IMG/VR virus record: IMGVR_UViG_3300049846_000628
Location: 1 to 64,000 of that record
Reading direction: 5' to 3' (one strand)
DNA: 64,000 nt
In this document: positions 4,254 through 48,442 of the stretch, piece by piece
Layout: each line of letters opens with the position of its first letter
Numbering within the stretch: the first letter of the stretch is position 1
The notes under the pieces: model-generated
The model's database searches: none
Seen by the model: only the letters and a program-made list of their open reading frames with translations
What the model was told of the DNA's origin: nothing
Position numbers and translations under genes: made by a program

Positions 4254-5315
4254 TTAGAGTGCGTTGCCTCGTGGAAGAACCTCCTCTGGGAACACAAAGT
4301 TCTCATGAGGTTGATCTACTGGAGCCATCCACGCTCTAAGACCCTCATTAAGGAGGATATTCTTCGTGTAGAACGTTTCAAACTCCGGATCCTCAGCGGC
4401 ACGGATCTCTTGACTTACAAAGTCGTAAGCACGAAGATTAAGGGCAAGACCAATGATACCAATGCTGGAAGTCCAAAGACCCATAACTGGTACAAAAAGC
4501 ATAAAGAAGTGCAACCAACGCTTGTTACTAAAAGCAATACCGAAGATCTGAGACCAGAATCTGTTAGCAGTAACCATTGAGTAGGTTTCTTCTTCTTGAG
4601 TTGGTTCAAAAGCCTTGAAAGTGTTCGCCTGCTCACTATCCTCATACAGTGTGTTTTCTACGGTTGCTCCGTGAATCGCACAGAGTAGTGCTCCACCCAG
4701 TATACCAGCAACTCCCATCATATGGAAGGGGTTGAGGGTCCAGTTGTGGAAACCTTGTAGGAACAGCAGAAACCTGAAGATAGCAGCAACACCAAATGAA
4801 GGTGCAAAGAACCAACTGGACTGACCCAGTGGATACATCAGGAACACGCTGACGAATACAGCGATGGGTCCAGAGAAAGCAATAGCGTTATAAGGACGAA
4901 TACCAACCAGTCGTGAAATCTCAAACTGGCGAAGCATAAATCCAATCAGGCTGAAAGCCCCGTGGAGCGCCACAAAAGTCCAGAGTCCCCCAAGTTGGCA
5001 CCACCTGACGAAATCCCCCTGAGACTCAGGACCCCAAAGTAGAAGAAGAGAATGACCCATAGAATCTGCGGGGGTTGATACTGCGGCTGTTAGCACATTA
5101 CAACCTTCTAAAAAACTTGAAGCAATACCGTGTGTATACCACGATGTCGTAAATGTAATGCCAGTCAACCAACCACCAAGAGCAAGATAGGCACAAGGTA
5201 TAAAAAGTAATCCAGACCATCCAATAAACACAAACCTATCTCGTTTCAACCAATCATCAACTAGGTCAAATAAACCTCGTCGTTGATTTTGTAAAGAAAT
5301 TGTAGATGAAACCAT
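4254..5315 (-). CDS. psbD: Photosystem II D2 protein
   Basis: DDWLKRDRF..., C-terminal [10 protein letters not shown]; true start ATG 5315 with GGAGG RBS (ORF track starts too early at 5372). Confidence 0.98.
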
Positions 5316-5381
5316 CAAACCTCCGTAATGATTTGTAATATTTATTTTATCACTTCTTAACAAAAGGGGCAATAGAGATTT

Positions 5382-6020
5382 CTACTTACTCTTCTTTTTC
5401 ATAGGAGTATCTGGGTCAAGTCCTCTTTCTATTCTATATTGTCTCCATCTTTCCTTTGCTCTTTCACTACATTTATTTTTACCTTCTTCTGTTTTAGGTC
5501 CTTGGACTTCTGGTTTTTTTCTATTTCCTTCATCCCAAGATTTCTTACAACCTTCACTTAATTTTTTCTTATGTTCTTCTGTTTTTGGAGCATAAGAAGC
5601 ACCAGGAATAAATGTCCCTTCTTGGAACTTTCTTTTTAGAGTTTCACTTCTTTTCTTATTACTTTCTTCTGTTTGAGGAACACCAGTTTTTGTTTTCCTC
5701 ATCTTTTCAACTGCTTCTGGTTTTTTAGGTTTTCCTAAATGAAGCAATCTTAATTTTTCCTTACTTTCTTCACTCATAGGTCCTCTATTTTCTCTTCCCC
5801 TTTCTTGTCCCAACTTCATAAGAAGAGAAATAACTTCTTCTTTACCTATCATACCAGATAGACCCATCCAAGCAATTCTATCCTCCTCCTTTCCATATTG
5901 TTCCCACAATTTTTTATGTGCCTCTGCGTGTTCCTCAATAGTCATTTCAACAAGATTAGAAGGGTCATCAGTTCCTCCCATATGTCTTGGAATAATATGA
6001 TGCTTGTGAGTAAGGGTCAT
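5382..6020 (-). CDS. HNH homing endonuclease with NUMOD3-like repeats
   Basis: HKHHIIPRHMGGTDDPSNLVEMTIEEHAEAH motif; basic MSEESKEKLR/KTEEHKKKLS repeats. Confidence 0.9.
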   Translation of the reverse strand: MTLTHKHHIIPRHMGGTDDPSNLVEMTIEEHAEAHKKLWEQYGKEEDRIAWMGLSGMIGKEEVISLLMKLGQERGRENRGPMSEESKEKLRLLHLGKPKKPEAVEKMRKTKTGVPQTEESNKKRSETLKRKFQEGTFIPGASYAPKTEEHKKKLSEGCKKSWDEGNRKKPEVQGPKTEEGKNKCSERAKERWRQYRIERGLDPDTPMKKKSK

Positions 6021-6127
6021 ATCAAGTATGTTTAACTAATACTATTTATACCAGTAGGTATACTAACAGGTATAAATGTTAAGAAATGCTGATACAAAAA
6101 AGAGACCTTCACAGGTCTCCTCTTTAC

Positions 6128-7521
6128 TCATTTTCTAAAAAGTCGTTCAAGGTTTTCTTTGTTCTTGAAGAGTTCATAGGATTTGATTTGCTCTCCATAA
6201 TACTTACTGATGTGCTTACACAAATCTTCTTCTTGTTTAGTAATATCCATATTATGTTTGTCTTTCAGGATAAGGATAGTTTCAATATCTTTGAGAGAAC
6301 TAAATGGAAGGTCTAAAAATTCTTCATAAGTCATTTTGCCCTCATAGCAGTAATCACAGCATCTCTTACTGTTTTTCCTTTTAGATGGTTCATACGAGAC
6401 CCACCATTCATAAAAACCCAATCACTTTCACCATTCATTTTGAGATTGTGTGCTTGGAACTGATTGAGTAGAAATTCAAGGATTTCTGTGTCTGTTGGTT
6501 GTTCAGTCATAGTTTATTCCTATAAGTGTATGTAATTTCTCCAGTTTCCTTATTCATCAGGTATGCCCAGTCAGTTGGAATTGTATCACAACAATCCCGA
6601 AACTTTTCAGTTGAAGATACTTCCATTACAATAGGAAGATTGTTAGAGTGATGATGAAAGATTGCTACAAGTTTCATTAGGTCACCTGATTTACGAAAGT
6701 TGGAACTTCACCACAAATCTTATTTGCCTCAGTATCATTCACACCATAAGATTTCCTACATTCTATCACAATCTCATAAGATTTCAAGAACATCTCTCTG
6801 TCCTTTTGAGTATTGTAAGTGTTTAGTAGTTCCATGGAAAGGAAATAACCAGTGACGATGAGAAGTGGAATGATGAGAGTAAAGATAAAGAGTTTCATTT
6901 CATTCATAGTAGGACATATCATAACTACCTTCATTATAACCCATTTGAAAGACTTCTTGGGCAAACTTCACAAAGGCATCAAAGTTTCCAGAATACTCCC
7001 AACCATCATTCTCATCCCAATCTTCTTCAAAGTGTTCTTTTACAAGTTTGAGGACTTCTTCATCTAAAATCATTTGAGTGCCTCCAATTCAGTAGCAATA
7101 CTCAAAATTGCCTCACGAATTTCGTCATTACGACCTTCCATTCCTGCGTCGTATTCTTTGTCCCCATAAAAACACCTATAATCGTCGGGGGCAACATTAT
7201 CAGCAAGAACACGAAGGGCAGAGGCAAATCCATCACGAATTCTTCCTCCGTGAGAAAATACTTCATCAGCAGCATCTATGATTGCTTGTGCTTTGGGAGA
7301 AAGGTCAGTCATCAGGCATCCTCCAAACGAATGTACTTTTCAAATAATCCTCTCATATCATAAAAATACGATCGTGCCCTATCAAGAACAGCAGTATCAT
7401 AATCTTCTTGTGTGGGTTCCTCTTCCATTTCCATATCCTTCCAAACTTCCAAGAAATCTTCAACAGACATATGGTATTCCAGAGGAATGTATGCGATTTT
7501 GGGAATGATTGAGTTAGTCAT
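6128..7521 (-). CDS. Run of ~7 small hypothetical early-type genes (cargo between psbD copies): 6128..6334, ~6331..6510, ~6507..6675, 6677..6907, ~6900..7072, 7070..7312, 7312..7521
   Basis: Abutting ORFs with ATGA/TAATG overlaps, from ORF track and manual reading; no recognisable families. Confidence 0.6.
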
Positions 7522-7699
7522 CGGTTTGGTTGCTTATGAGAATATTATACCATCAAAAAAGGCACCTGCGAAGTGCCCTTGTTCCAGTTTAGAAAGTGTC
7601 TTTTATATTTTTACCTATTATCAGTTTGTTCTCTGTATCTCTGTAAATCTCTAAACAATCCATTCACACCAATAAAGATTAGATACAATCCCAAAAAGG

Positions 7700-7807
7700 T
7701 CATACAGAAGTCCTCACGGAATCTAAGAGGTTTTGTTTAAGCCAGTCATCAAGGACATCGAACCAACCTCTCTGTGAAATGGGCGGTGAAAGTGTTGAAG
7801 AAGTCAT
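7700..7807 (-). pseudogene. psbD: Orphan 5' fragment of psbD (24 D2 codons, then 11 unrelated codons and a stop)
   Basis: MTSSTLSPPISQRGWFDVLDDWLK|QNLLDSVRTSV*; GGAGG RBS and own promoter. Confidence 0.9.
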
Positions 7808-7827: not shown

Positions 7828-7862
7828 ATATTTATCTTAACATTCCTTAACAAAGAAGTCAA
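7828..7862 (-). promoter_or_regulatory. Original psbD promoter (sigma70-like plus late-like)
   Basis: TTGACT-17-TAAGAT overlapping GATAAATA; GTTAAGGA-AT-GTTAAGAT direct repeat. Confidence 0.7.
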
Positions 7863-7981
7863 CCCCAATAGATGACTCCAAGAGTGAAGAAAAGGAATAT
7901 AAGAATAGTGAATACCATAAGACCTACACCTAACCAGTTTACCCAGTTAGGCATAGGTTCGTGCTGAGGATTATGAGACAT
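7859..7981 (-). CDS. Small membrane protein (40 aa, MSHNPQHEPMPNWVNWLGVGLMVFTILIFLFFTLGVIYWG)
   Basis: Manual translation; start overlaps the end of the GIY-YIG gene. Confidence 0.6.
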   Translation of the reverse strand: MSHNPQHEPMPNWVNWLGVGLMVFTILIFLFFTLGVIYWG

Positions 7982-8645
7982 TGGTTTTGTGTTTTTGTTT
8001 TCTATATTTCCAATTTTGGTTTCCTTTTTTTGCTTCGCTTAATTTTTTTCTAGTTTCTTCTGATGGTGTTTTGCCTTTATGTGCTTCACTCATTTTCTTT
8101 TTGGTTTCATCGGATAATTTTTTACCTTTCATATTCTGATTACCTTTTTGTGCTTCACCAACTTTTTGTTTAGTTTCATCAGAAAGTTTTCTACCAAGAT
8201 TCCAAGTATTTCCCATCATTCTCTGCCTTATTTTATCTTTATGTTCCTCCGTTAATTTCATTCCTTTTCTTTTTTCACTTATTTTTTGTTTTTGTTCTTC
8301 CGTCATTTTTTTACCATAGTTGGGATTTTTTTCACCAACTCTCATTTCACTTAATTTTTTTCGTGTCTCTTCATTTACCAAAACACCAGAAGCACCTTCA
8401 CCACCATTAGTTCTGTTGCGAAGAATACCAGTTCCCAAATCCTTCCTACCAAATACATCAATCATATAGATTTCGTGTTTAAATGCTTCTTCTTCAGTTA
8501 AGTTTTTCTTCAAAAATATTATTCTAGATTTATCTTTTGGTGGTCTTATATCACCATTCATTTTATTATAAATTCTTTTTCCTTTTCCCTTTCCAATATA
8601 ATAAGGAGTTTTATCCTCTCGCAAATAAGCGTAAGTGTAATACAT
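7971..8645 (-). CDS. GIY-YIG homing endonuclease with NUMOD3 repeats
   Basis: YYTYAYLREDKTPYYIGKG..., repeated SDETKKKMSEAHKG. Confidence 0.92.
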   Translation of the reverse strand: MYYTYAYLREDKTPYYIGKGKGKRIYNKMNGDIRPPKDKSRIIFLKKNLTEEEAFKHEIYMIDVFGRKDLGTGILRNRTNGGEGASGVLVNEETRKKLSEMRVGEKNPNYGKKMTEEQKQKISEKRKGMKLTEEHKDKIRQRMMGNTWNLGRKLSDETKQKVGEAQKGNQNMKGKKLSDETKKKMSEAHKGKTPSEETRKKLSEAKKGNQNWKYRKQKHKTNVS

Positions 8646-8758
8646 TTCTACTCTGTTATGGTTCGCAATAATATTTATAATACATTATAGCAGAAAAGGT
8701 GCCCGAAGACACCTTTTCACCTGATAGATGCGAACCACACAGGTATTAGTATTTATAT

Positions 8759-8786
8759 AAAAAAAGGAACCCCGAAGAGTTCCTTA
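8759..8786 (-). terminator. psbA terminator
   Basis: AAGGAAC...GTTCCTT hairpin followed by a T run. Confidence 0.75.
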
Positions 8787-8798
8787 ACTTTATTGAAA

Positions 8799-10139
8799 TT
8801 ATCCTACAGTCGGTGCGGTGAGAGCAACAGGAGTGCTTTCAGCAGCAGCAAGGTCAAGAGGGAAATTGTGCAATTGTGTTATCGTAAAGACTCTTTATTC
8901 TTTACTTCTTACTGTCGCCAGTAAGTTCAGACTATCTCTTCATCCTTATGTTTATTAAGGAGTCGGGCATTCGTGGGTAGATTATTGTTGGGACTCACTA
9001 CCTAGTCGTTAGACCTTTCAGAAAACTTAAACCCTTTCTGACTTGGTACGGGATTGTCTCATAGAGAGTTTCCCCGTTTAACCCGATTTTTCTAATGCCT
9101 ATTACTAGGCAACAACACCAACAATTCTAGCGTTGCGCTCGTGCATTACCTCCATTCCCAGTCCAGCACGGTTGAGAACATCAGCCCAGGTGTTAATAAC
9201 TTTACCCTGACTATCAACGATAGACTGGTTGAAGTTGAAACCATTCAGGTTGAATGCCATCGTAGAAACACCAAGAGCGGTGAACCAGATGCCTACAACG
9301 GGCCAGGCAGCAAGGAAGAAGTGCAGCGAACGGGAGTTATTAAAGGAAGCATATTGAAAAATAAGGCGTCCGAAATAACCATGAGCAGCAACGATGTTAT
9401 AAGTCTCTTCTTCTTGACCGAACTTGTAACCATAGTTCTGTGACTCGTTCTCGGTGGTTTCACGAACCAGTGAGGAAGTAACCAGAGAACCGTGCATAGC
9501 ACTGAACAGAGAACCACCGAACACACCAGCAACTCCAAGCATATGGAAGGGGTGCATCAGGATGTTGTGCTCTGCCTGGAACACAAGCATGTAGTTGAAC
9601 GTACCAGAGATACCCAGAGGCATCGCATCAGAGAAAGAACCTTGACCGAAAGGATAGACAAGGAACACCGCACTCGCAGCGGCAACAGGTGCAGAGTAGG
9701 CAACGCAGATCCAAGGACGCATACCCAGACGGTAGGAAAGTTCCCACTCACGACCCATATAAGCATAGATGCCGATGAGGAAGTGGAAGACTACCAGTTG
9801 GAAAGGTCCACCGTTGTAAAGCCACTCATCTAGGGAAGCAGCTTCCCAGATGGGGTAAAAGTGCAGTCCAATAGCATTGGACGAAGGAATCACAGCACCA
9901 GAGATGATGTTGTTTCCGTACATGAGTGAACCAGCAACGGGTTCACGGATTCCATCGATGTCCACAGGAGGAGCAGCGATGAATGCAACGATAAAGCAGA
10001 TTGTTGCAGCGAGTAGACAAGGCACCATCAATACACCAAACCACCCGACATACAAACGATTATCGGTGCTGGTGATCCAGTTACAAAATTGATCCCAAAT
10101 ATTTGATTGTGATTGTTGACGTGAAAGTGTAGCAGTCAT
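8799..10139 (-). CDS. psbA: Photosystem II D1 protein, spliced: exon 1 10139..9129, exon 2 8870..8799 (360 aa)
   Basis: MTATLSRQQ...HERNA / [23 protein letters not shown]; E130-type (GREWELS). Confidence 0.97.
8871..9128 (-). mobile_element. Group I self-splicing intron (258 nt, no ORF) in psbA
   Basis: Exon ends in U, intron ends in G; P1 AACGCU/GGUGUU with U.G pair; P10 AAUUGU/ACAAUU; P7 GACUA/UAGUC; removal restores HERNA-HNFP. Confidence 0.95.
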
Positions 10140-10270
10140 TTGTTTAAAAAGGGTAAGTAAAAGTTCGGGGGAACGAACAGTTGTAAGTATCTCCCACAGC
10201 ACCCTCCACTGTGGGTATAAGAGACGTATTTTACATGGATAGTCTCGGTAAGGAGTATTAGTCCCTTTTC
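10140..10270 (-). ncRNA. Structured psbA 5' leader (possibly PhotoRC-II-like motif)
   Basis: Hairpins GAGAC...GTCTC and CCCACAG-TGGAGGGTG-CTGTGGG; motif name from recollection only. Confidence 0.5.
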
Positions 10271-10282
10271 TCCATGGTCAAT

Positions 10283-10353
10283 GTTACGAAACATTAAAGA
10301 TCCGTTACATTTGTTTACCTATTTATCATAGCACTTCATGAAGCAGAAGTCAA
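10283..10353 (-). promoter_or_regulatory. psbA promoter with HLR1-like boxes
   Basis: TTGACT(10353-10348)-17-TATGAT(10330-10325); GTTACATT-TG-TTTACCTA at 10304-10321 (+). Confidence 0.65.
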
Positions 10354-10835
10354 GTGGTGTATTGATTAATGCCTCTTATGTTTCCACCTCTTTGCTCACA
10401 CCCTTTCTTTGGTCCTGATTTGAGGTGTAGTTCATAACCAAACTTTGAGCATTCACGAATAGCTCTTTTGACTTGATGTTCTTTTAACCCAAGTAAGTCG
10501 GCAACTTCTTTTCTTGATAGTCCTGACTGACGATATTTAAGAATAGAAAGTTCTTGTTGTGTTGGTTCAGTTTTCTTTGGAGGTTTTCCTCTTTTTTCAG
10601 TTGAGTTTCCTTTACTTTTCTTTGCCCAGTTGATTGCTTGTTTATCGTGAATAATTTTGTGAGTTGCTGGATGATAAACATATAAGTGCTCTGGAATGTT
10701 TCTACCACCTTCACATCTTGGTGGATTATGGTGAACATCTATATTTTCCATTTGCTCATCAGTAAGTCCATAGTGCTGTTGAGCAACTTTACGATAGTTA
10801 TGTTTATCAGTAGAGAGAACAATAGCAGAACACAT
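10350..10835 (-). CDS. HNH homing endonuclease with C-terminal HTH
   Basis: IDVHHNPPRCEGGRNIPEHLYVYHPATHKIIH; probable ATG 10835 with GGAG RBS. Confidence 0.85.
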   Translation of the reverse strand: MCSAIVLSTDKHNYRKVAQQHYGLTDEQMENIDVHHNPPRCEGGRNIPEHLYVYHPATHKIIHDKQAINWAKKSKGNSTEKRGKPPKKTEPTQQELSILKYRQSGLSRKEVADLLGLKEHQVKRAIRECSKFGYELHLKSGPKKGCEQRGGNIRGINQYTT

Positions 10836-10892
10836 AAAAAACTCCAAACCTACTATTATTTAGGTAGGTTTGGAGTTGTAATGAAGTTTATG

Positions 10893-11932: not shown

Positions 11933-12052
11933 TCACCATACACCAGGAATAACTTGTCCGCTAACCAGGTAAGAACCAGCAGCAGCGACGAACCCAATCA
12001 TTGCGAACCAACCATTAATGCGCTCACTGCGCTCGTTAAAAAGATTTTTCAT
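11933..12052 (-). CDS. hli: High-light-inducible protein (39 aa)
   Basis: ERSERINGWFAMIGFVAAAGSY...GQVIPG chlorophyll-binding motif; below ORF-track length cutoff. Confidence 0.93.
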   Translation of the reverse strand: MKNLFNERSERINGWFAMIGFVAAAGSYLVSGQVIPGVW

Positions 12053-12573
12053 TGTTTTTTCTCCTGTAATAATTGTTTAAAGTTGTAAGTAATTTTTTCT
12101 AATTCTTCAAGTGTGGCATCATTCTTTATTTGATTTGCTCTATGAGATATAACCCAAACATTTCCCTTAATATATCCAAGTTTTGGATTAATTCTATCAA
12201 GAGAGGGAGCAAACCCATCACCAGTTCCCATTGGAGAAAGTTTAATGTTTAAAAGAGGACAATACTCTGGAATAGAAATATCTTCTACTGAAATATTGAA
12301 CTCTATATTTCTTTCTCTTGCTCTTTTTTGAGCACACCTTAACATTCTATATTCGGGAACTTTCCAATTTCCACCAGATGTATTTCTAATACATCCGCAA
12401 CTTTTAACTGTCTTGAAATCGGAAGCAATTAAACTATGAAGTTTTCCACAGTCACATTTACATTGCAAAAATCTTCTTTTTCTTCCCGAATTTTCTATTT
12501 TTGTAAATTCAGAAATAACTGTAAGTTTATTAAGTTTTGTTCCTGGTGGATAATCAAGTTTGAGTTTTCCCAT
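12049..12573 (-). CDS. HNH/EndoVII-like homing endonuclease
   Basis: CKCDCG..SCGC; PSLDRINPKLGYIKGNVWVISHRANQIK. Confidence 0.85.
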   Translation of the reverse strand: MGKLKLDYPPGTKLNKLTVISEFTKIENSGRKRRFLQCKCDCGKLHSLIASDFKTVKSCGCIRNTSGGNWKVPEYRMLRCAQKRARERNIEFNISVEDISIPEYCPLLNIKLSPMGTGDGFAPSLDRINPKLGYIKGNVWVISHRANQIKNDATLEELEKITYNFKQLLQEKKQ

Positions 12574-12637
12574 AGAATATTGAAATGCTATAACTATTTA
12601 TACAGAAATAACTTTTCAATAAAAGTTATGCTTGGTT

Positions 12638-25735: not shown

Positions 25736-25802
25736 AAGGTATGATTTGATATCTAGTTATTATACTAAAAAAGGTGGGTTTATGCAACCCACCTTTATGT
25801 GC

Positions 25803-26209
25803 TCAGGCTCGCCACCAATTCTTTTACTGGAAATTGGAAACCAGGCGGGGTAACCCCATCCGCACCACCAATCCTTTAAAGAGAGATTGGAAACTCAATG
25901 GGTCATTGACTCCACCACCTAGTTTACAAACAAACTAGGAAAGGATAGTTGGATTAATTTTGGAACTTCAATAGCACCATAAAAGGCACACAATACAAGA
26001 ATATCCCAAAACTTATACTTGATAGCAAAAGGAATGACGAAAACATTCCCAATACACTTTACAAGCAATCCAGTTTTTGGATCTCCCCATAGAAGGACAA
26101 AGTATCCTGAGAGGAGAAGAATGTTACCGATGTAACGCATTACATCGGTGTTTTTCATTAAGGGGGATTTCATCACCGACCAGGGCTTAGTTTTAAGTCA
26201 TAACCGAGA
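25803..26209 (-). ncRNA. Multi-hairpin structured RNA (manA-motif-like), interrupted by an ORF
   Basis: GACTTAAAACT..CCCTGGTCGG 5' part; three TTTCC-stem-GGTGG units; ends TGGCGAGCCTG before a terminator-like hairpin. Confidence 0.55.
25919..26176 (-). CDS. Small membrane protein (85 aa)
   Basis: Hydrophobic ORF; start and stop lie in the RNA structure elements. Confidence 0.6.
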   Translation of the reverse strand: MMKSPLMKNTDVMRYIGNILLLSGYFVLLWGDPKTGLLVKCIGNVFVIPFAIKYKFWDILVLCAFYGAIEVPKLIQLSFPSLFVN

Positions 26210-33551: not shown

Positions 33552-33691
33552 GTAAGAGACCTCCTGGTTTGTGCATCGTTGATAGGCATAGGAGGGGCAG
33601 GTCTTATGCGGAGTTTGGACCCCCGCTGCCTATGAAAGTATTATAGGATAGAGAGGGGCTTACGTCAAGCCCCTCCAACTATTCTATTGTA

Positions 33692-47892: not shown

Positions 47893-48442
47893 TCATAGTA
47901 GCATATGAAATATTTTGAGACTTACAAAACTCTTTTAATGCTCCAATAATAATATACTCTTTATTTTCTGGAGAAACAATTCTCCAAGTTTTAGAGTTTG
48001 GATTATCTTTACCAAATTTTGGTGCTTTATTTTGACTTATTTTATTTCTTGTTTCTTGTGATAATTTAACACCATATCTTGGATTGTTCTTACCAGCAAC
48101 CTTTTCACTTATTCTTTTCTTTGCTTCTTCACTATGTTTTCTTCCGCTAAATCCCTTCGTTCTCTGTCCTCCAGGTTTTCCTTCTCCACCAAGATTTTGA
48201 TTTAACAGAACTCCACCATCACACTCTCTTTTCCAAAGTGCTATATGCTTTATCTCAAGTTCTATTGCTTCTTCTTTGGATAGTCCAGATTTTACAATCC
48301 ACCTTCTTTCTCTTGGAGGCAAAATTTCAGCACCATTTTTTCGGGAATGACTGGAATTAATTCTTCTTGGTCTTCCATAACCAACATAAAAGGGAGAACT
48401 AAAGTCCTCCCTTAAGTAATAATACAGAATATAGTTATTCAT
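47828..48442 (-). CDS. GIY-YIG homing endonuclease with NUMOD3
   Basis: YILYYYLRED..PFYVGYG.PRR; RKHSEEAKKRISE. Confidence 0.9.
   Translation of the reverse strand: MNNYILYYYLREDFSSPFYVGYGRPRRINSSHSRKNGAEILPPRERRWIVKSGLSKEEAIELEIKHIALWKRECDGGVLLNQNLGGEGKPGGQRTKGFSGRKHSEEAKKRISEKVAGKNNPRYGVKLSQETRNKISQNKAPKFGKDNPNSKTWRIVSPENKEYIIIGALKEFCKSQNISYATMSAAIKYDRRGPRKNGWSIEKV

What the first reader, a model, noticed from the sequence alone, without database searches (positions are those of the whole stretch)
8799..9128. ORF-less group I intron at the Mn-cluster codons of psbA, paired with a downstream GIY-YIG
Seen: a 258-nt intron between HERNA and HNFP (standard Ala336/His337), with a free-standing GIY-YIG 150 bp downstream and an HNH upstream. 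Known: in S-PM2 an ORF-less psbA intron is mobilised by the free-standing F-CphI (collaborative homing), which is not a GIY-YIG enzyme. Inference: an independent collaborative-homing partnership using a different nuclease family.
Basis: partly seen in the sequence, partly recalled or inferred. Interest (0 to 1): 0.6.

Follow-up and report, generated by a model that had tools for sequence, protein, structure and literature searches.

The report
Mobile psbA intron beside GIY-YIG nuclease
A cyanophage photosynthesis gene (psbA) really is split by a small self-splicing intron with a selfish GIY-YIG DNA-cutting enzyme gene next door, and metagenomes show this is one variant of a common arrangement in which different nuclease families sit behind intron-bearing psbA.

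Summary
psbA lies on the minus strand: exon 1 at 10139-9129, a 258-nt group I intron at 9128-8871 (Rfam 64.8 bits against a gathering score of 50), and exon 2 at 8870-8799. The junction is HERNA|HNFP. A 224-aa GIY-YIG/NUMOD3 gene (8645-7971) starts 153 nt after the stop codon.

This is not the S-PM2 intron. It sits 6 nt downstream of that site and is about 54% identical to it. No cultured phage record searched holds it, but 23 IMG/VR contigs do, at 87-99.6% identity inside much more diverged exons, so it looks recently mobile.

In all 22 contigs with downstream sequence, a nuclease-like gene follows psbA directly: 14 of a T5orf172-like family and 8 F-CphI-like. Only this phage has the GIY-YIG there. 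Nuclease genes are rare behind intronless psbA (7 of 100).

The partnership reading is only partly supported. The closest GIY-YIG orthologue (94%) sits behind an intronless psbA and another (86%) behind the S-PM2-type intron, so this intron is not needed to protect the phage's own gene. The likeliest mechanism is trans-homing by co-conversion. Cleavage specificity is untested.

The parts
9129..10139 (-). psbA exon 1: 337 codons, MTATL...MHERNA, last base T
   Evidence: ORF list and sequence. 80-88% nt identity to psbA of many Synechococcus myoviruses.
8871..9128 (-). ORF-less group I intron, 258 nt ('type B', inserted between the Ala336 and His337 codons). An insertion at the P7.1/P7.2 position suggests subgroup IA.
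   Evidence: Rfam RF00028, 64.8 bits, E 4e-16. P1 with U.G, P10 and a terminal G read from the sequence. 12 of 60 predicted pairs show compensatory changes across 14 homologues. 23 IMG/VR contigs carry it at the same site.
8799..8870 (-). psbA exon 2: [23 protein letters not shown] plus stop codon
   Evidence: Sequence. Intronless phage psbA genes align across the junction with exactly 258 nt missing.
8764..8785 (-). psbA intrinsic terminator hairpin followed by a T run. It marks the left edge of the nuclease slot.
   Evidence: Terminator scan. The hairpin is also present in S-PM2 and L028. Homology to contigs carrying other nucleases ends here, at about 8757-8812.
8672..8679 (-). TATAAATA, the T4-type late-promoter motif, 27 nt before the GIY-YIG start codon. 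A second copy lies at 8750-8757.
   Evidence: Pattern search: 12 matches in the window against 4.8 expected. Matches also precede the nuclease ORFs that start at 6020 and 12573.
7971..8645 (-). Free-standing GIY-YIG/NUMOD3 (Seg/I-TevI-like) homing endonuclease gene, 224 aa
   Evidence: NUMOD3 x4, E 1.2e-27. TIGR01453 group I intron endonuclease, E 4.9e-10, below its cut-off. PHROG 314 homing endonuclease, E 5.8e-22. Y3, Y5, Y15, Y16, G18, R24, H57, E58 and N77 are invariant in 28 homologues. dN/dS 0.24 and 0.12.
7859..7981 (-). Conserved 40-aa hydrophobic ORF that marks the right edge of the nuclease slot. It overlaps the 3' end of the GIY-YIG ORF.
   Evidence: Homologues follow F-CphI-type or other slot genes in L008, L012, L013, L019, L020, L027 and L028.
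10350..10847 (-). HNH-like ORF (motif HH..N..H) with a C-terminal HTH, upstream of psbA
   Evidence: Sequence. Pfam HTH_23, E 1.9e-5, with no Pfam HNH hit. A 95.7% orthologue lies upstream of an intronless psbA in L323.
10179..10286 (-). PhotoRC-II RNA motif in the psbA 5' leader
   Evidence: Rfam RF01717, 52.8 bits against a gathering score of 39.

Best explanation
The window holds a cyanomyovirus psbA gene interrupted by a functional, ORF-less group I intron. The intron belongs to a widespread environmental lineage ('type B', between the Ala336 and His337 codons). That lineage is distinct from the S-PM2 intron ('type A', 6 nt upstream, between Arg334 and Asn335). The RNA must splice itself out to restore the codons for the Mn-cluster ligands.

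The intron spreads at the DNA level. When two phages co-infect, a double-strand break near this stretch of an intronless psbA is repaired from the intron-bearing copy.

Immediately 3' of psbA is a one-gene slot that holds a free-standing nuclease gene in almost every intron-bearing relative. Here the slot holds a Seg/I-TevI-like GIY-YIG/NUMOD3 enzyme with its own late-promoter-like motif. My reading is that this enzyme is an active homing endonuclease. It would cut psbA-3'/intergenic DNA of phages that lack it. Because the intron lies only 226 nt from the gene, the intron would be carried along in the same repair tract. This is trans or collaborative homing in the loose, co-conversion sense.

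Shown: the intron's anatomy, its conservation, the slot equivalence and the population-level association. Inferred: splicing, nuclease activity, the cleavage site and co-conversion. The strict version, in which the intron is what protects this phage's own psbA from its own nuclease, is not required by the data.
For: - Intron. Rfam 64.8 bits. P1, P10 and terminal G. Compensatory changes in P2, P6, P7.1, P9 and P9.1. All 24 type-B loci have GCT at the 5' splice site, against 72% of intronless psbA.
- Mobility. The intron is 96-99.6% identical in loci whose exon 2 is only 55-82% identical and whose exon 1 is 73-92% identical.
- Slot. The GIY-YIG lies between the psbA terminator and the 40-aa ORF, exactly where F-CphI homologues (Pfam Endonuclease_7, E 5.6e-22) or the 197-aa protein lie in the other 22 type-B loci.
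- Association. Nuclease-like ORFs fill the slot in 22/22 type-B and 74/80 type-A loci, against 7/100 intronless loci (Fisher test, inflated by duplicate contigs).
- GIY-YIG recurrence. Two separate clades sit behind intron-bearing psbA at three staggered sites.
- Enzyme state. Catalytic residues are invariant and dN/dS is 0.12-0.24. A late-promoter-like motif lies 27 nt upstream.
- Junction. The window matches intron donors at exon-2 positions +3 and +6. From about +24 through the GIY-YIG gene it matches L028 (94%, with an identical 3'UTR). A recombination junction therefore lies within about 24 nt of the insertion site.
Against: - L028/L029 carry the 94% orthologue 153 nt behind an intronless psbA whose insertion-site sequence is unremarkable.
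- L323 shows the same for the second GIY-YIG clade.
- The window's intron is closest (99.2-99.6%) to copies paired with the 197-aa protein, so it may have arrived through that nuclease.
- No cleavage site can be derived from sequence.
- Pfam's GIY-YIG model does not hit, and the AlphaFold model was too poor to use (pLDDT 56).
- Metatranscriptome contigs gave no unambiguous spliced junction.
Confidence: 0.5

Rival explanations
1. Strict collaborative homing. The GIY-YIG recognises the roughly 10-30 bp around the HERNAHNFP codons of intronless psbA. The intron interrupts that site and so gives the phage immunity, just as F-CphI and the S-PM2 intron work together.
For: Three intron lineages insert within 9 bp of each other (types A, B and C). 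GIY-YIG genes of two clades are found behind all three. There is a strong intron-nuclease association. A recombination junction lies within about 24 nt of the insertion site. I-TevI-type enzymes are known to bind at intron insertion sites (established knowledge).
Against: Orthologues at 94% (L028/L029), and the clade-2 orthologue in L323, sit next to intronless psbA genes. L028's insertion-site sequence (CATAAC) is the second most common among intronless alleles.
Confidence: 0.25
2. No functional link. The psbA-psbD region is a general hotspot for homing endonuclease genes. The GIY-YIG does ordinary intronless homing against some other nearby target. The intron was acquired separately, through the nuclease of a co-infecting phage (197-aa type or F-CphI type) cutting an L028-like genome.
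For: Four nuclease-like ORFs lie within about 7 kb. The intron is 99.6% identical to copies in 197-aa-type contigs, while the GIY-YIG cassette is 94% identical to that of intronless L028. Most relatives of this GIY-YIG family (<=60% identity) lie elsewhere in phage genomes. A psbD 5' stub shows other rearrangements nearby.
Against: GIY-YIG genes in this exact slot were found in 11 of 115 pattern-derived intron-bearing loci and in 0 of 100 intronless ones. At 226 nt from the gene, the intron would be co-converted by almost any break the enzyme makes nearby.
Confidence: 0.25
3. The intron is kept mainly as a regulator of D1 synthesis, as light-dependent splicing is reported to be for S-PM2d. The neighbouring nuclease is incidental.
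For: Light-responsive splicing of the S-PM2d psbA intron is reported in PMC5931967. Unspliced RNA here would give a truncated D1.
Against: A regulatory role does not explain near-identical introns in diverged exons. It also does not explain the nuclease association. Most cyanophage psbA genes do without an intron.
Confidence: 0.1

Closest known systems
S-PM2 psbA intron with free-standing F-CphI (collaborative homing; Zeng et al. 2009 as cited in PMC6083498 and PMC3984707)
   Same: [quoted passage not shown] A free-standing nuclease gene lies directly after the psbA terminator, followed by psbD. Both introns carry the insertion at the P7.1/P7.2 position.
   Different: The insertion site is 6 nt downstream (Ala336|His337 rather than Arg334|Asn335). 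The intron is 258 nt rather than 212 nt and only about 54% identical over aligned bases. The nuclease is GIY-YIG/NUMOD3, not Endo VII-type. Cleavage and immunity have been shown for F-CphI and are untested here.
Phage T4 mobE promoting trans homing of the nrdB intron with defunct I-TevIII (PMC2790892)
   Same: A free-standing nuclease gene next to an intron-bearing gene can mobilise an intron that has no working nuclease of its own, through co-conversion.
   Different: mobE is an HNH enzyme and the T4 intron still carries a decayed nuclease ORF. Here the intron has no ORF at all and the neighbour is a GIY-YIG.
T4 Seg proteins (SegF, SegG): free-standing GIY-YIG enzymes doing intronless homing (cited in PMC6083498)
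   Same: A free-standing GIY-YIG catalytic domain with repeated DNA-binding modules, sitting between conserved genes of a T4-like phage. Phage records annotate relatives as Seg-like.
   Different: The Seg targets are mapped. None is described as paired with an ORF-less intron in its target gene.
I-TevI (intron-encoded GIY-YIG of the T4 td intron)
   Same: An N-terminal GIY-YIG domain plus NUMOD3-type DNA-binding repeats. The profile of this family weakly matches the I-TevI DNA-binding domain 1I3J (E 0.037) and TIGR01453.
   Different: I-TevI is encoded inside its intron. This gene is outside the intron and outside psbA.
Cyanophage psbA introns that contain a nuclease ORF (S-CBWM1, and S-SRM01 ORF320, as described in PMC8557907)
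   Same: Group I introns in cyanophage psbA that are associated with endonucleases.
   Different: There the ORF is inside the intron. I did not compare their insertion sites.

Membership tests
Group I intron (Rfam RF00028) | Covariance-model score at or above the curated gathering score | tested here: met
   64.8 bits against 50, E 4.1e-16, full-length model match 1-253.
Group I intron (Rfam RF00028) | U at the end of the 5' exon forming U.G in P1 with an internal guide sequence; terminal G; P10 with the 3' exon | tested here: met
   Exon AACGCU pairs with intron GGUGUU. The last intron base (8871) is G. Intron AAUUGU pairs with exon-2 ACAAUU. GCT is found in 24/24 loci.
Group I intron (Rfam RF00028) | Conserved core helices maintained by compensatory changes | tested here: met
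   12 of 60 predicted pairs have changes on both sides that keep the pair, in P2, P6, P7.1, P9 and P9.1, across 14 sequences. Few pairs are broken.
Group I intron (Rfam RF00028) | Removal restores an intact host reading frame | tested here: met
   Joining 9129 to 8870 gives ...MHERNA|HNFPLDLA... Intronless phage psbA genes align with exactly 258 nt missing.
Group I intron (Rfam RF00028) | Self-splicing shown at the RNA level | tested here: inconclusive
   Only assembled contigs of RNA runs were available. The joints that skip the intron carry exon variants of intronless alleles. Two RNA runs have contigs that end exactly at 8871.
GIY-YIG homing endonuclease (I-TevI/Seg type) | GIY...YIG motif pair with catalytic Arg, Glu and Asn | tested here: met
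   YTY (3-5) and YYIG (15-18). R24, E58 and N77 are invariant in 28 homologues. Their assignment to the I-TevI residues R27, E75 and N90 is by position and from memory.
GIY-YIG homing endonuclease (I-TevI/Seg type) | Significant match to a curated GIY-YIG family model | tested here: inconclusive
   No Pfam PF01541 hit, and LEM-3 GIY-YIG at E 0.11. TIGR01453 at E 4.9e-10 but 39.8 bits, below the 56 cut-off. PDB GIY-YIG chain 9u75 at E 0.02. PHROG 314 homing endonuclease at E 5.8e-22.
GIY-YIG homing endonuclease (I-TevI/Seg type) | Modular DNA-binding region (NUMOD3 repeats) | tested here: met
   Pfam NUMOD3, 4 stretches, E 1.2e-27.
GIY-YIG homing endonuclease (I-TevI/Seg type) | GIY-YIG alpha/beta fold | tested here: inconclusive
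   The AlphaFold2 model has mean pLDDT 56. The order of secondary-structure elements is compatible, but the model is too weak for a fold search.
GIY-YIG homing endonuclease (I-TevI/Seg type) | Site-specific DNA cleavage | not testable with these tools
   Needs an enzyme assay.
Collaborative homing pair (as for the S-PM2 intron and F-CphI) | ORF-less intron in a conserved gene with a free-standing nuclease gene adjacent | tested here: met
   The intron is 9128-8871 and the GIY-YIG starts at 8645, 153 nt after the stop codon.
Collaborative homing pair (as for the S-PM2 intron and F-CphI) | Intron and nuclease co-occur across genomes | tested here: inconclusive
   At population level the answer is yes: 96/102 against 7/100. 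For this GIY-YIG clade the picture is mixed: type-B intron in the window, type-A intron in L030, no intron in L028/L029.
Collaborative homing pair (as for the S-PM2 intron and F-CphI) | [quoted passage not shown] | not testable with these tools
The intronless psbA beside the 94% orthologue argues that the intron is not needed for immunity.

The most novel reading that the evidence does not exclude
The nine base pairs of psbA that encode Arg334-Asn338, inside the Mn-cluster ligand segment, are a convergent landing pad. Three group I intron lineages insert there at staggered positions: CGT|, GCT| and CAT|. A single downstream slot is filled interchangeably by at least four nuclease families: Endo VII-type F-CphI, two clades of GIY-YIG/NUMOD3, a previously undescribed 197-aa T5orf172-like protein, and HNH_5. 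On this reading collaborative homing is modular. Introns and nucleases would be shuffled freely because all of them aim at the same short conserved target.
Probability: 0.45. Interest if true: 0.7.

Novelty: new variant of a known kind. Interest (0 to 1): 0.55.

Why it matters
Collaborative homing is the proposed route by which nuclease-free introns and free-standing nucleases first meet before they fuse into classic mobile introns. It rests on two or three studied cases.

This locus and its metagenomic relatives would show the same psbA target served by several intron lineages and several unrelated nuclease families, and they offer natural controls: the same nuclease with and without an intron, and the same intron with three different nucleases. 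That makes two questions directly testable. Is the intron the immunity element? How often do partners swap?

It also matters for annotation. Intron-split psbA genes and their neighbouring nucleases are easily mis-called in viral metagenomes. Relatives of this GIY-YIG are annotated as 'translation initiation factor 2' in several phage records.

Tried and rejected
- The whole-window Rfam scan with gathering thresholds missed the intron. The local scan found it.
- blastn of the intron against 50,697 phage records found no cyanophage copy. It found only partial core similarity to Clostridium and Streptococcus phage introns, and a 33-nt exact match in phiKZ-like Pseudomonas phages.
- The Pfam GIY-YIG model gave no hit. 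PDB sequence and profile searches gave only weak hits.
- The AlphaFold2 model of the GIY-YIG had pLDDT 56, so I ran no fold search.
- Reads: 1,801 letters were laid on four runs, and only contigs were available. The joints that skip the intron are intronless alleles (a GCA or CATAAC variant, one of them also in the DNA-like run X19), so they do not show splicing.
- Comparing exon 1 with candidate parental lineages gave no clear donor. The identity profile against L028 shows no sharp step at the insertion site.
- The GIY-YIG tree is poorly resolved apart from two clades.
- Millard 2004, Millard 2010 and Zeng 2009 are not in the library. I therefore could not check whether type-B or type-C sites, or GIY-YIG neighbours, were already noted in their metagenome survey.
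- psbA was searched exon by exon, by reference. The joined (spliced) D1 was not sent to any search tool, and that step is left out. The only joined comparison was a local pairwise alignment inside a script.
- Complex prediction was not used because no protein-protein claim is made.
Full report
**1. The observation**

The window is part of a 211-kb uncultivated virus record from IMG/VR. Its features mark it as a T4-like cyanomyovirus: psbA, psbD, a PhotoRC-II leader, a wcaG RNA and a tRNA cluster.

psbA lies on the minus strand.
- Exon 1 runs from the ATG at 10139 to 9129. It ends ...CAC GAG CGC AAC GCT (HERNA).
- The next 258 nt (9128-8871) end in G.
- Exon 2 (8870-8799) reads [23 protein letters not shown] and then stop.

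In the standard D1 numbering (from my own knowledge of photosystem II) this junction is Ala336|His337. It lies inside the segment that supplies His332, Glu333, His337, Asp342 and Ala344 to the Mn4CaO5 cluster.

A local Rfam scan calls a full-length group I intron at 64.8 bits, against a gathering score of 50, with E 4e-16. The whole-window scan with fast filters had missed it.

The splice-site pairings can be read off the sequence.
- P1: the exon bases AACGCU pair with the intron bases GGUGUU, with U.G at the cut.
- P10: the intron bases AAUUGU pair with the first bases of exon 2, ACAAUU.

Read without splicing, the frame stops after 8 codons. The D1 C-terminus therefore depends on splicing.

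A 224-aa ORF (8645-7971) starts 153 nt after the stop codon. An HNH-like ORF with an HTH domain (10847-10350) lies upstream.

**2. This is not the S-PM2 intron**

In S-PM2 (NC_006820) the 212-nt intron sits between CGT (Arg334) and AAT (Asn335), which is 6 nt upstream of the site used here. F-CphI follows psbA there.

The two introns share the catalytic core and an insertion at the P7.1/P7.2 position. From that I infer subgroup IA for both. They are only about 54% identical over aligned bases.

I call the S-PM2 site type A and the window's site type B.

No record among 50,697 phage genomes holds the type-B intron. Every cyanophage psbA that matched both exons lacks exactly 258 nt.

**3. The intron is common in metagenomes and looks recently mobile**

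A pattern scan of IMG/VR looked for an insertion of 236-266 nt at exactly this codon junction. It returned 23 contigs, with introns of 258 nt or a 251-nt variant, 87-99.6% identical to the window's.

- Across 14 of them, 12 of 60 predicted base pairs show compensatory changes, in P2, P6, P7.1, P9 and P9.1. Few pairs are broken. The RNA fold is therefore under selection.
- All 24 copies follow GCT, against 72% GCT among intronless genes. That fits the need for a U at the 5' splice site.
- The intron is 96-99.6% identical in contigs whose exon 2 is only 55-82% identical and whose exon 1 is 73-92% identical. This is what horizontal spread by homing predicts.

**4. What lies behind intron-bearing psbA**

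In every one of the 22 type-B contigs with downstream sequence, a nuclease-like ORF begins 60-100 nt after the psbA stop codon.

- Eight carry an F-CphI homologue: 38-46% identical to S-PM2 F-CphI, Pfam Endonuclease_7 at E 5.6e-22.
- Fourteen carry a conserved 192-213-aa protein, here called the 197-aa protein after the L009 copy. It has no Pfam, PHROG, NCBIfam or PDB match.
  - Its C-terminal half carries a GIY-YIG-like pattern (YLYFIE..YKIGRS..KYR..GGSEHF), and it has a NUMOD3-like GKNNPAFGK.
  - The protein atlas places it among clusters labelled 'GIY-YIG nuclease family', with DUF723/T5orf172/MUG113, at score 0.93. This is a lead, not a proof.
- Only the window has a GIY-YIG/NUMOD3 gene there.

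The slot is bounded on one side by the psbA terminator hairpin (8764-8785). On the other side is a conserved 40-aa hydrophobic ORF (7859-7981) that precedes psbD. The GIY-YIG therefore sits exactly where F-CphI sits elsewhere.

**5. The association is general**

| psbA state | Loci examined | What fills the slot |
|---|---|---|
| Type-A intron | 80 parsed | 64 F-CphI-type, 6 GIY-YIG/NUMOD3, 2 relatives of the 197-aa protein, 2 HNH_5 (Pfam E 6e-12), 6 nothing recognised |
| Type-B intron | 22 with downstream sequence | 14 of the 197-aa family, 8 F-CphI-type |
| Type-C intron | 13 | 5 GIY-YIG, 1 F-CphI-type, 6 other candidate DNA-binding or nuclease proteins, 1 unrelated ORF |
| Intronless sample | 100 of 120 with at least 700 nt downstream | 5 F-CphI-like, 2 HNH_5, no GIY-YIG |

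Following up the second GIY-YIG clade revealed the third insertion site, type C. It lies after the His337 codon (CAT|) and the introns there are 228-240 nt.

A Fisher test gives very small p values. However, contigs from related samples are not independent. The intronless sample also mixes phage types. The size of the effect matters more than the p value.

**6. The GIY-YIG itself**

- Pfam finds four NUMOD3 repeats (E 1.2e-27) but no GIY-YIG domain.
- TIGR01453 ('group I intron endonuclease') matches at E 4.9e-10, below its cut-off.
- PHROG 314 ('homing endonuclease') matches at E 5.8e-22.
- Phage records annotate relatives as Seg-like or GIY-YIG.
- In an alignment of 28 homologues, Y3, Y5, Y15, Y16, G18, R24, H57, E58 and N77 are invariant. 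That is the GIY...YIG pair plus the Arg, Glu and Asn of the active site.
- dN/dS is 0.24 against the 94% orthologue and 0.12 against the 86% orthologue.
- TATAAATA, the T4 late-promoter motif, lies 27 nt before the start codon. It also precedes two other nuclease ORFs in the window.

The gene therefore looks intact, selected and separately transcribed. The structure model was too poor to use.

**7. Why the partnership reading needs trimming**

The nearest orthologues all sit in the same slot, but behind different psbA states.
- L028/L029 (94% aa): an intronless psbA.
- L030 (86%): the type-A intron.
- The window: the type-B intron.

L028's insertion-site sequence is ordinary for intronless genes.

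The second GIY-YIG clade is well separated in the tree (100/100 support). It shows the same spread: type A, type C and an intronless psbA in L323.

So these enzymes do not need any particular intron, or any intron at all, next to them.

Conversely, the window's intron is closest to copies paired with the 197-aa protein.

The window matches intron-bearing contigs at exon-2 positions +3 and +6 (CACAAT). From about +24 to the end of the GIY-YIG gene it matches L028, at 94% with an identical 3'UTR. There are two possible histories. An L028-like phage may have gained the intron with a very short co-conversion tract. Or a GIY-YIG cassette may have converted an intron-bearing phage from a break just inside exon 2. 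Both imply a break within a few tens of bases of the insertion site. The data do not say whose nuclease made it.

**8. Mechanism I commit to**

The intron is a working ribozyme and a mobile element. The GIY-YIG is an active free-standing homing endonuclease. Like T4 Seg enzymes, it would cut DNA of co-infecting phages that lack it, somewhere in the psbA 3' end or the slot. Because the intron lies 226 nt away, it would usually be copied in the same repair event. This is trans-homing, as with T4 mobE and the nrdB intron (PMC2790892).

| Reading | My estimate |
|---|---|
| Trans-homing by co-conversion (above) | about 0.5 |
| Strict model: the site is split by the intron, which gives immunity | about 0.25 |
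| No functional link | about 0.25 |

A regulatory role for splicing (PMC5931967) could coexist with any of these.

**9. RNA evidence**

Metatranscriptomes from freshwater, estuarine and aquatic samples hold parts of the stretch, but only as assembled contigs.
- The joints that skip the intron carry GCA or CATAAC exon variants. One of them also occurs in the DNA-like run. They are therefore intronless alleles, not spliced RNA.
- Two RNA runs from different studies have contigs that end exactly at the intron's last base. This is a weak hint of excised intron RNA.

**10. Novelty and limits**

ORF-less psbA introns with a free-standing nuclease are known (S-PM2). They are said to be widespread in metagenomes (PMC5931967, citing Millard 2010, which I could not read).

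As far as I could check, these points are new:
- the type-B and type-C insertion sites;
- the GIY-YIG/NUMOD3 and 197-aa partners;
- the interchangeability of nucleases in one slot.

I rate this a new variant of a known kind. All claims about function are inferences from sequence.

psbA was searched exon by exon, by reference.

Noticed in passing
L005, L007, L009, L011, L014, L015, L017, L018, L020, L021, L023, L025, L026, L027 (for example L009:7969-8559): A conserved 192-213-aa protein always sits directly after type-B intron-bearing psbA. It has no Pfam, PHROG, NCBIfam or PDB hit. It carries a GIY-YIG/T5orf172-like motif (YLYFIE..YKIGRS..KYR..GGSEHF) and a NUMOD3-like GKNNPAFGK. Atlas neighbours are DUF723/T5orf172 'GIY-YIG nuclease family' clusters. 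It is a candidate undescribed homing endonuclease family.
   Followed up: partly
L319:2100-2339 and L390-L402: A third psbA intron insertion site, after the His337 codon (HERNAH|NFP). It is 3 nt from the window's site and 9 nt from S-PM2's. The introns are 228-240 nt, found in 13 IMG/VR contigs. In the one copy I read (L319) the core is S-PM2-like but the ends differ.
   Followed up: partly
L006, L008, L010-L013, L016, L017, L019, L021-L023 (positions equivalent to window ~9243, ~9492, ~9816, ~9906, ~9958): Related contigs have further insertions inside psbA exon 1. One of about 220 nt is equivalent to window ~9243. Insertions of about 810-900 nt with HNH-like ORFs are equivalent to ~9492 and ~9816. 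Some environmental cyanophage psbA genes would therefore carry two or three introns. These were inferred only from alignment breaks and tblastn hits.
   Followed up: no
window 7736-7807 (-) and 5374-7735: A 24-codon psbD 5' stub (MTSSTLSPPISQRGWFDVLDDWLK, then diverging to a stop) lies after the 40-aa ORF. It is closer to other phages' psbD than to this phage's own psbD (4257-5315). Between the stub and the real psbD is a ~2.4-kb insert of small ORFs ending in an HNH/NUMOD-like gene (5382-6020). This looks like the scar of a nuclease-associated replacement.
   Followed up: partly
window 6043-6050, 8672-8679, 8750-8757, 12595-12602 (all -): The T4 late-promoter motif TATAAATA lies 22-27 nt before the start codons of three nuclease-like ORFs (5382-6020, 7971-8645, 12049-12573). 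There are 12 copies in the window against 4.8 expected by chance.
   Followed up: partly
window 12049-12573 (-): A 174-aa ORF with no Pfam hit matches PHROG 3322 'endonuclease' (E 3e-30) and Endo VII/HNH PHROGs. Homologues (38-40%) lie just after psbD in L005, L009, L024 and L028. With it, there are four nuclease-like genes within about 7 kb of psbA/psbD.
   Followed up: no
window 9048-9080 (intron nt 49-81): A 33-nt exact match to unannotated stretches of 12 phiKZ-like Pseudomonas jumbo-phage genomes. It is probably the P4-P5 core of group I introns there.
   Followed up: no
window 8871 (RNA runs X2, X3): Metatranscriptome contigs from two different studies end exactly at the last base of the intron. 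This is compatible with excised intron RNA, but contigs cannot prove RNA ends.
   Followed up: no
window ~48032-48433 (-): A second GIY-YIG-like coding stretch, 39% identical over 137 aa to the psbA-adjacent one, lies elsewhere in the window.
   Followed up: no
phage records MW015081, MN695334/5, PV340852: Relatives of this GIY-YIG/NUMOD3 protein are annotated as 'translation initiation factor 2' in several Synechococcus phage genomes. This is probably a mis-annotation caused by the lysine-rich repeats.
   Followed up: no
window 33559-33595 (-) and 25801-25898 (-): There is an Rfam abiF RNA match (44.2 bits against a gathering score of 37) next to the tRNA cluster, and a strong wcaG RNA match (96 bits).
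   Followed up: no
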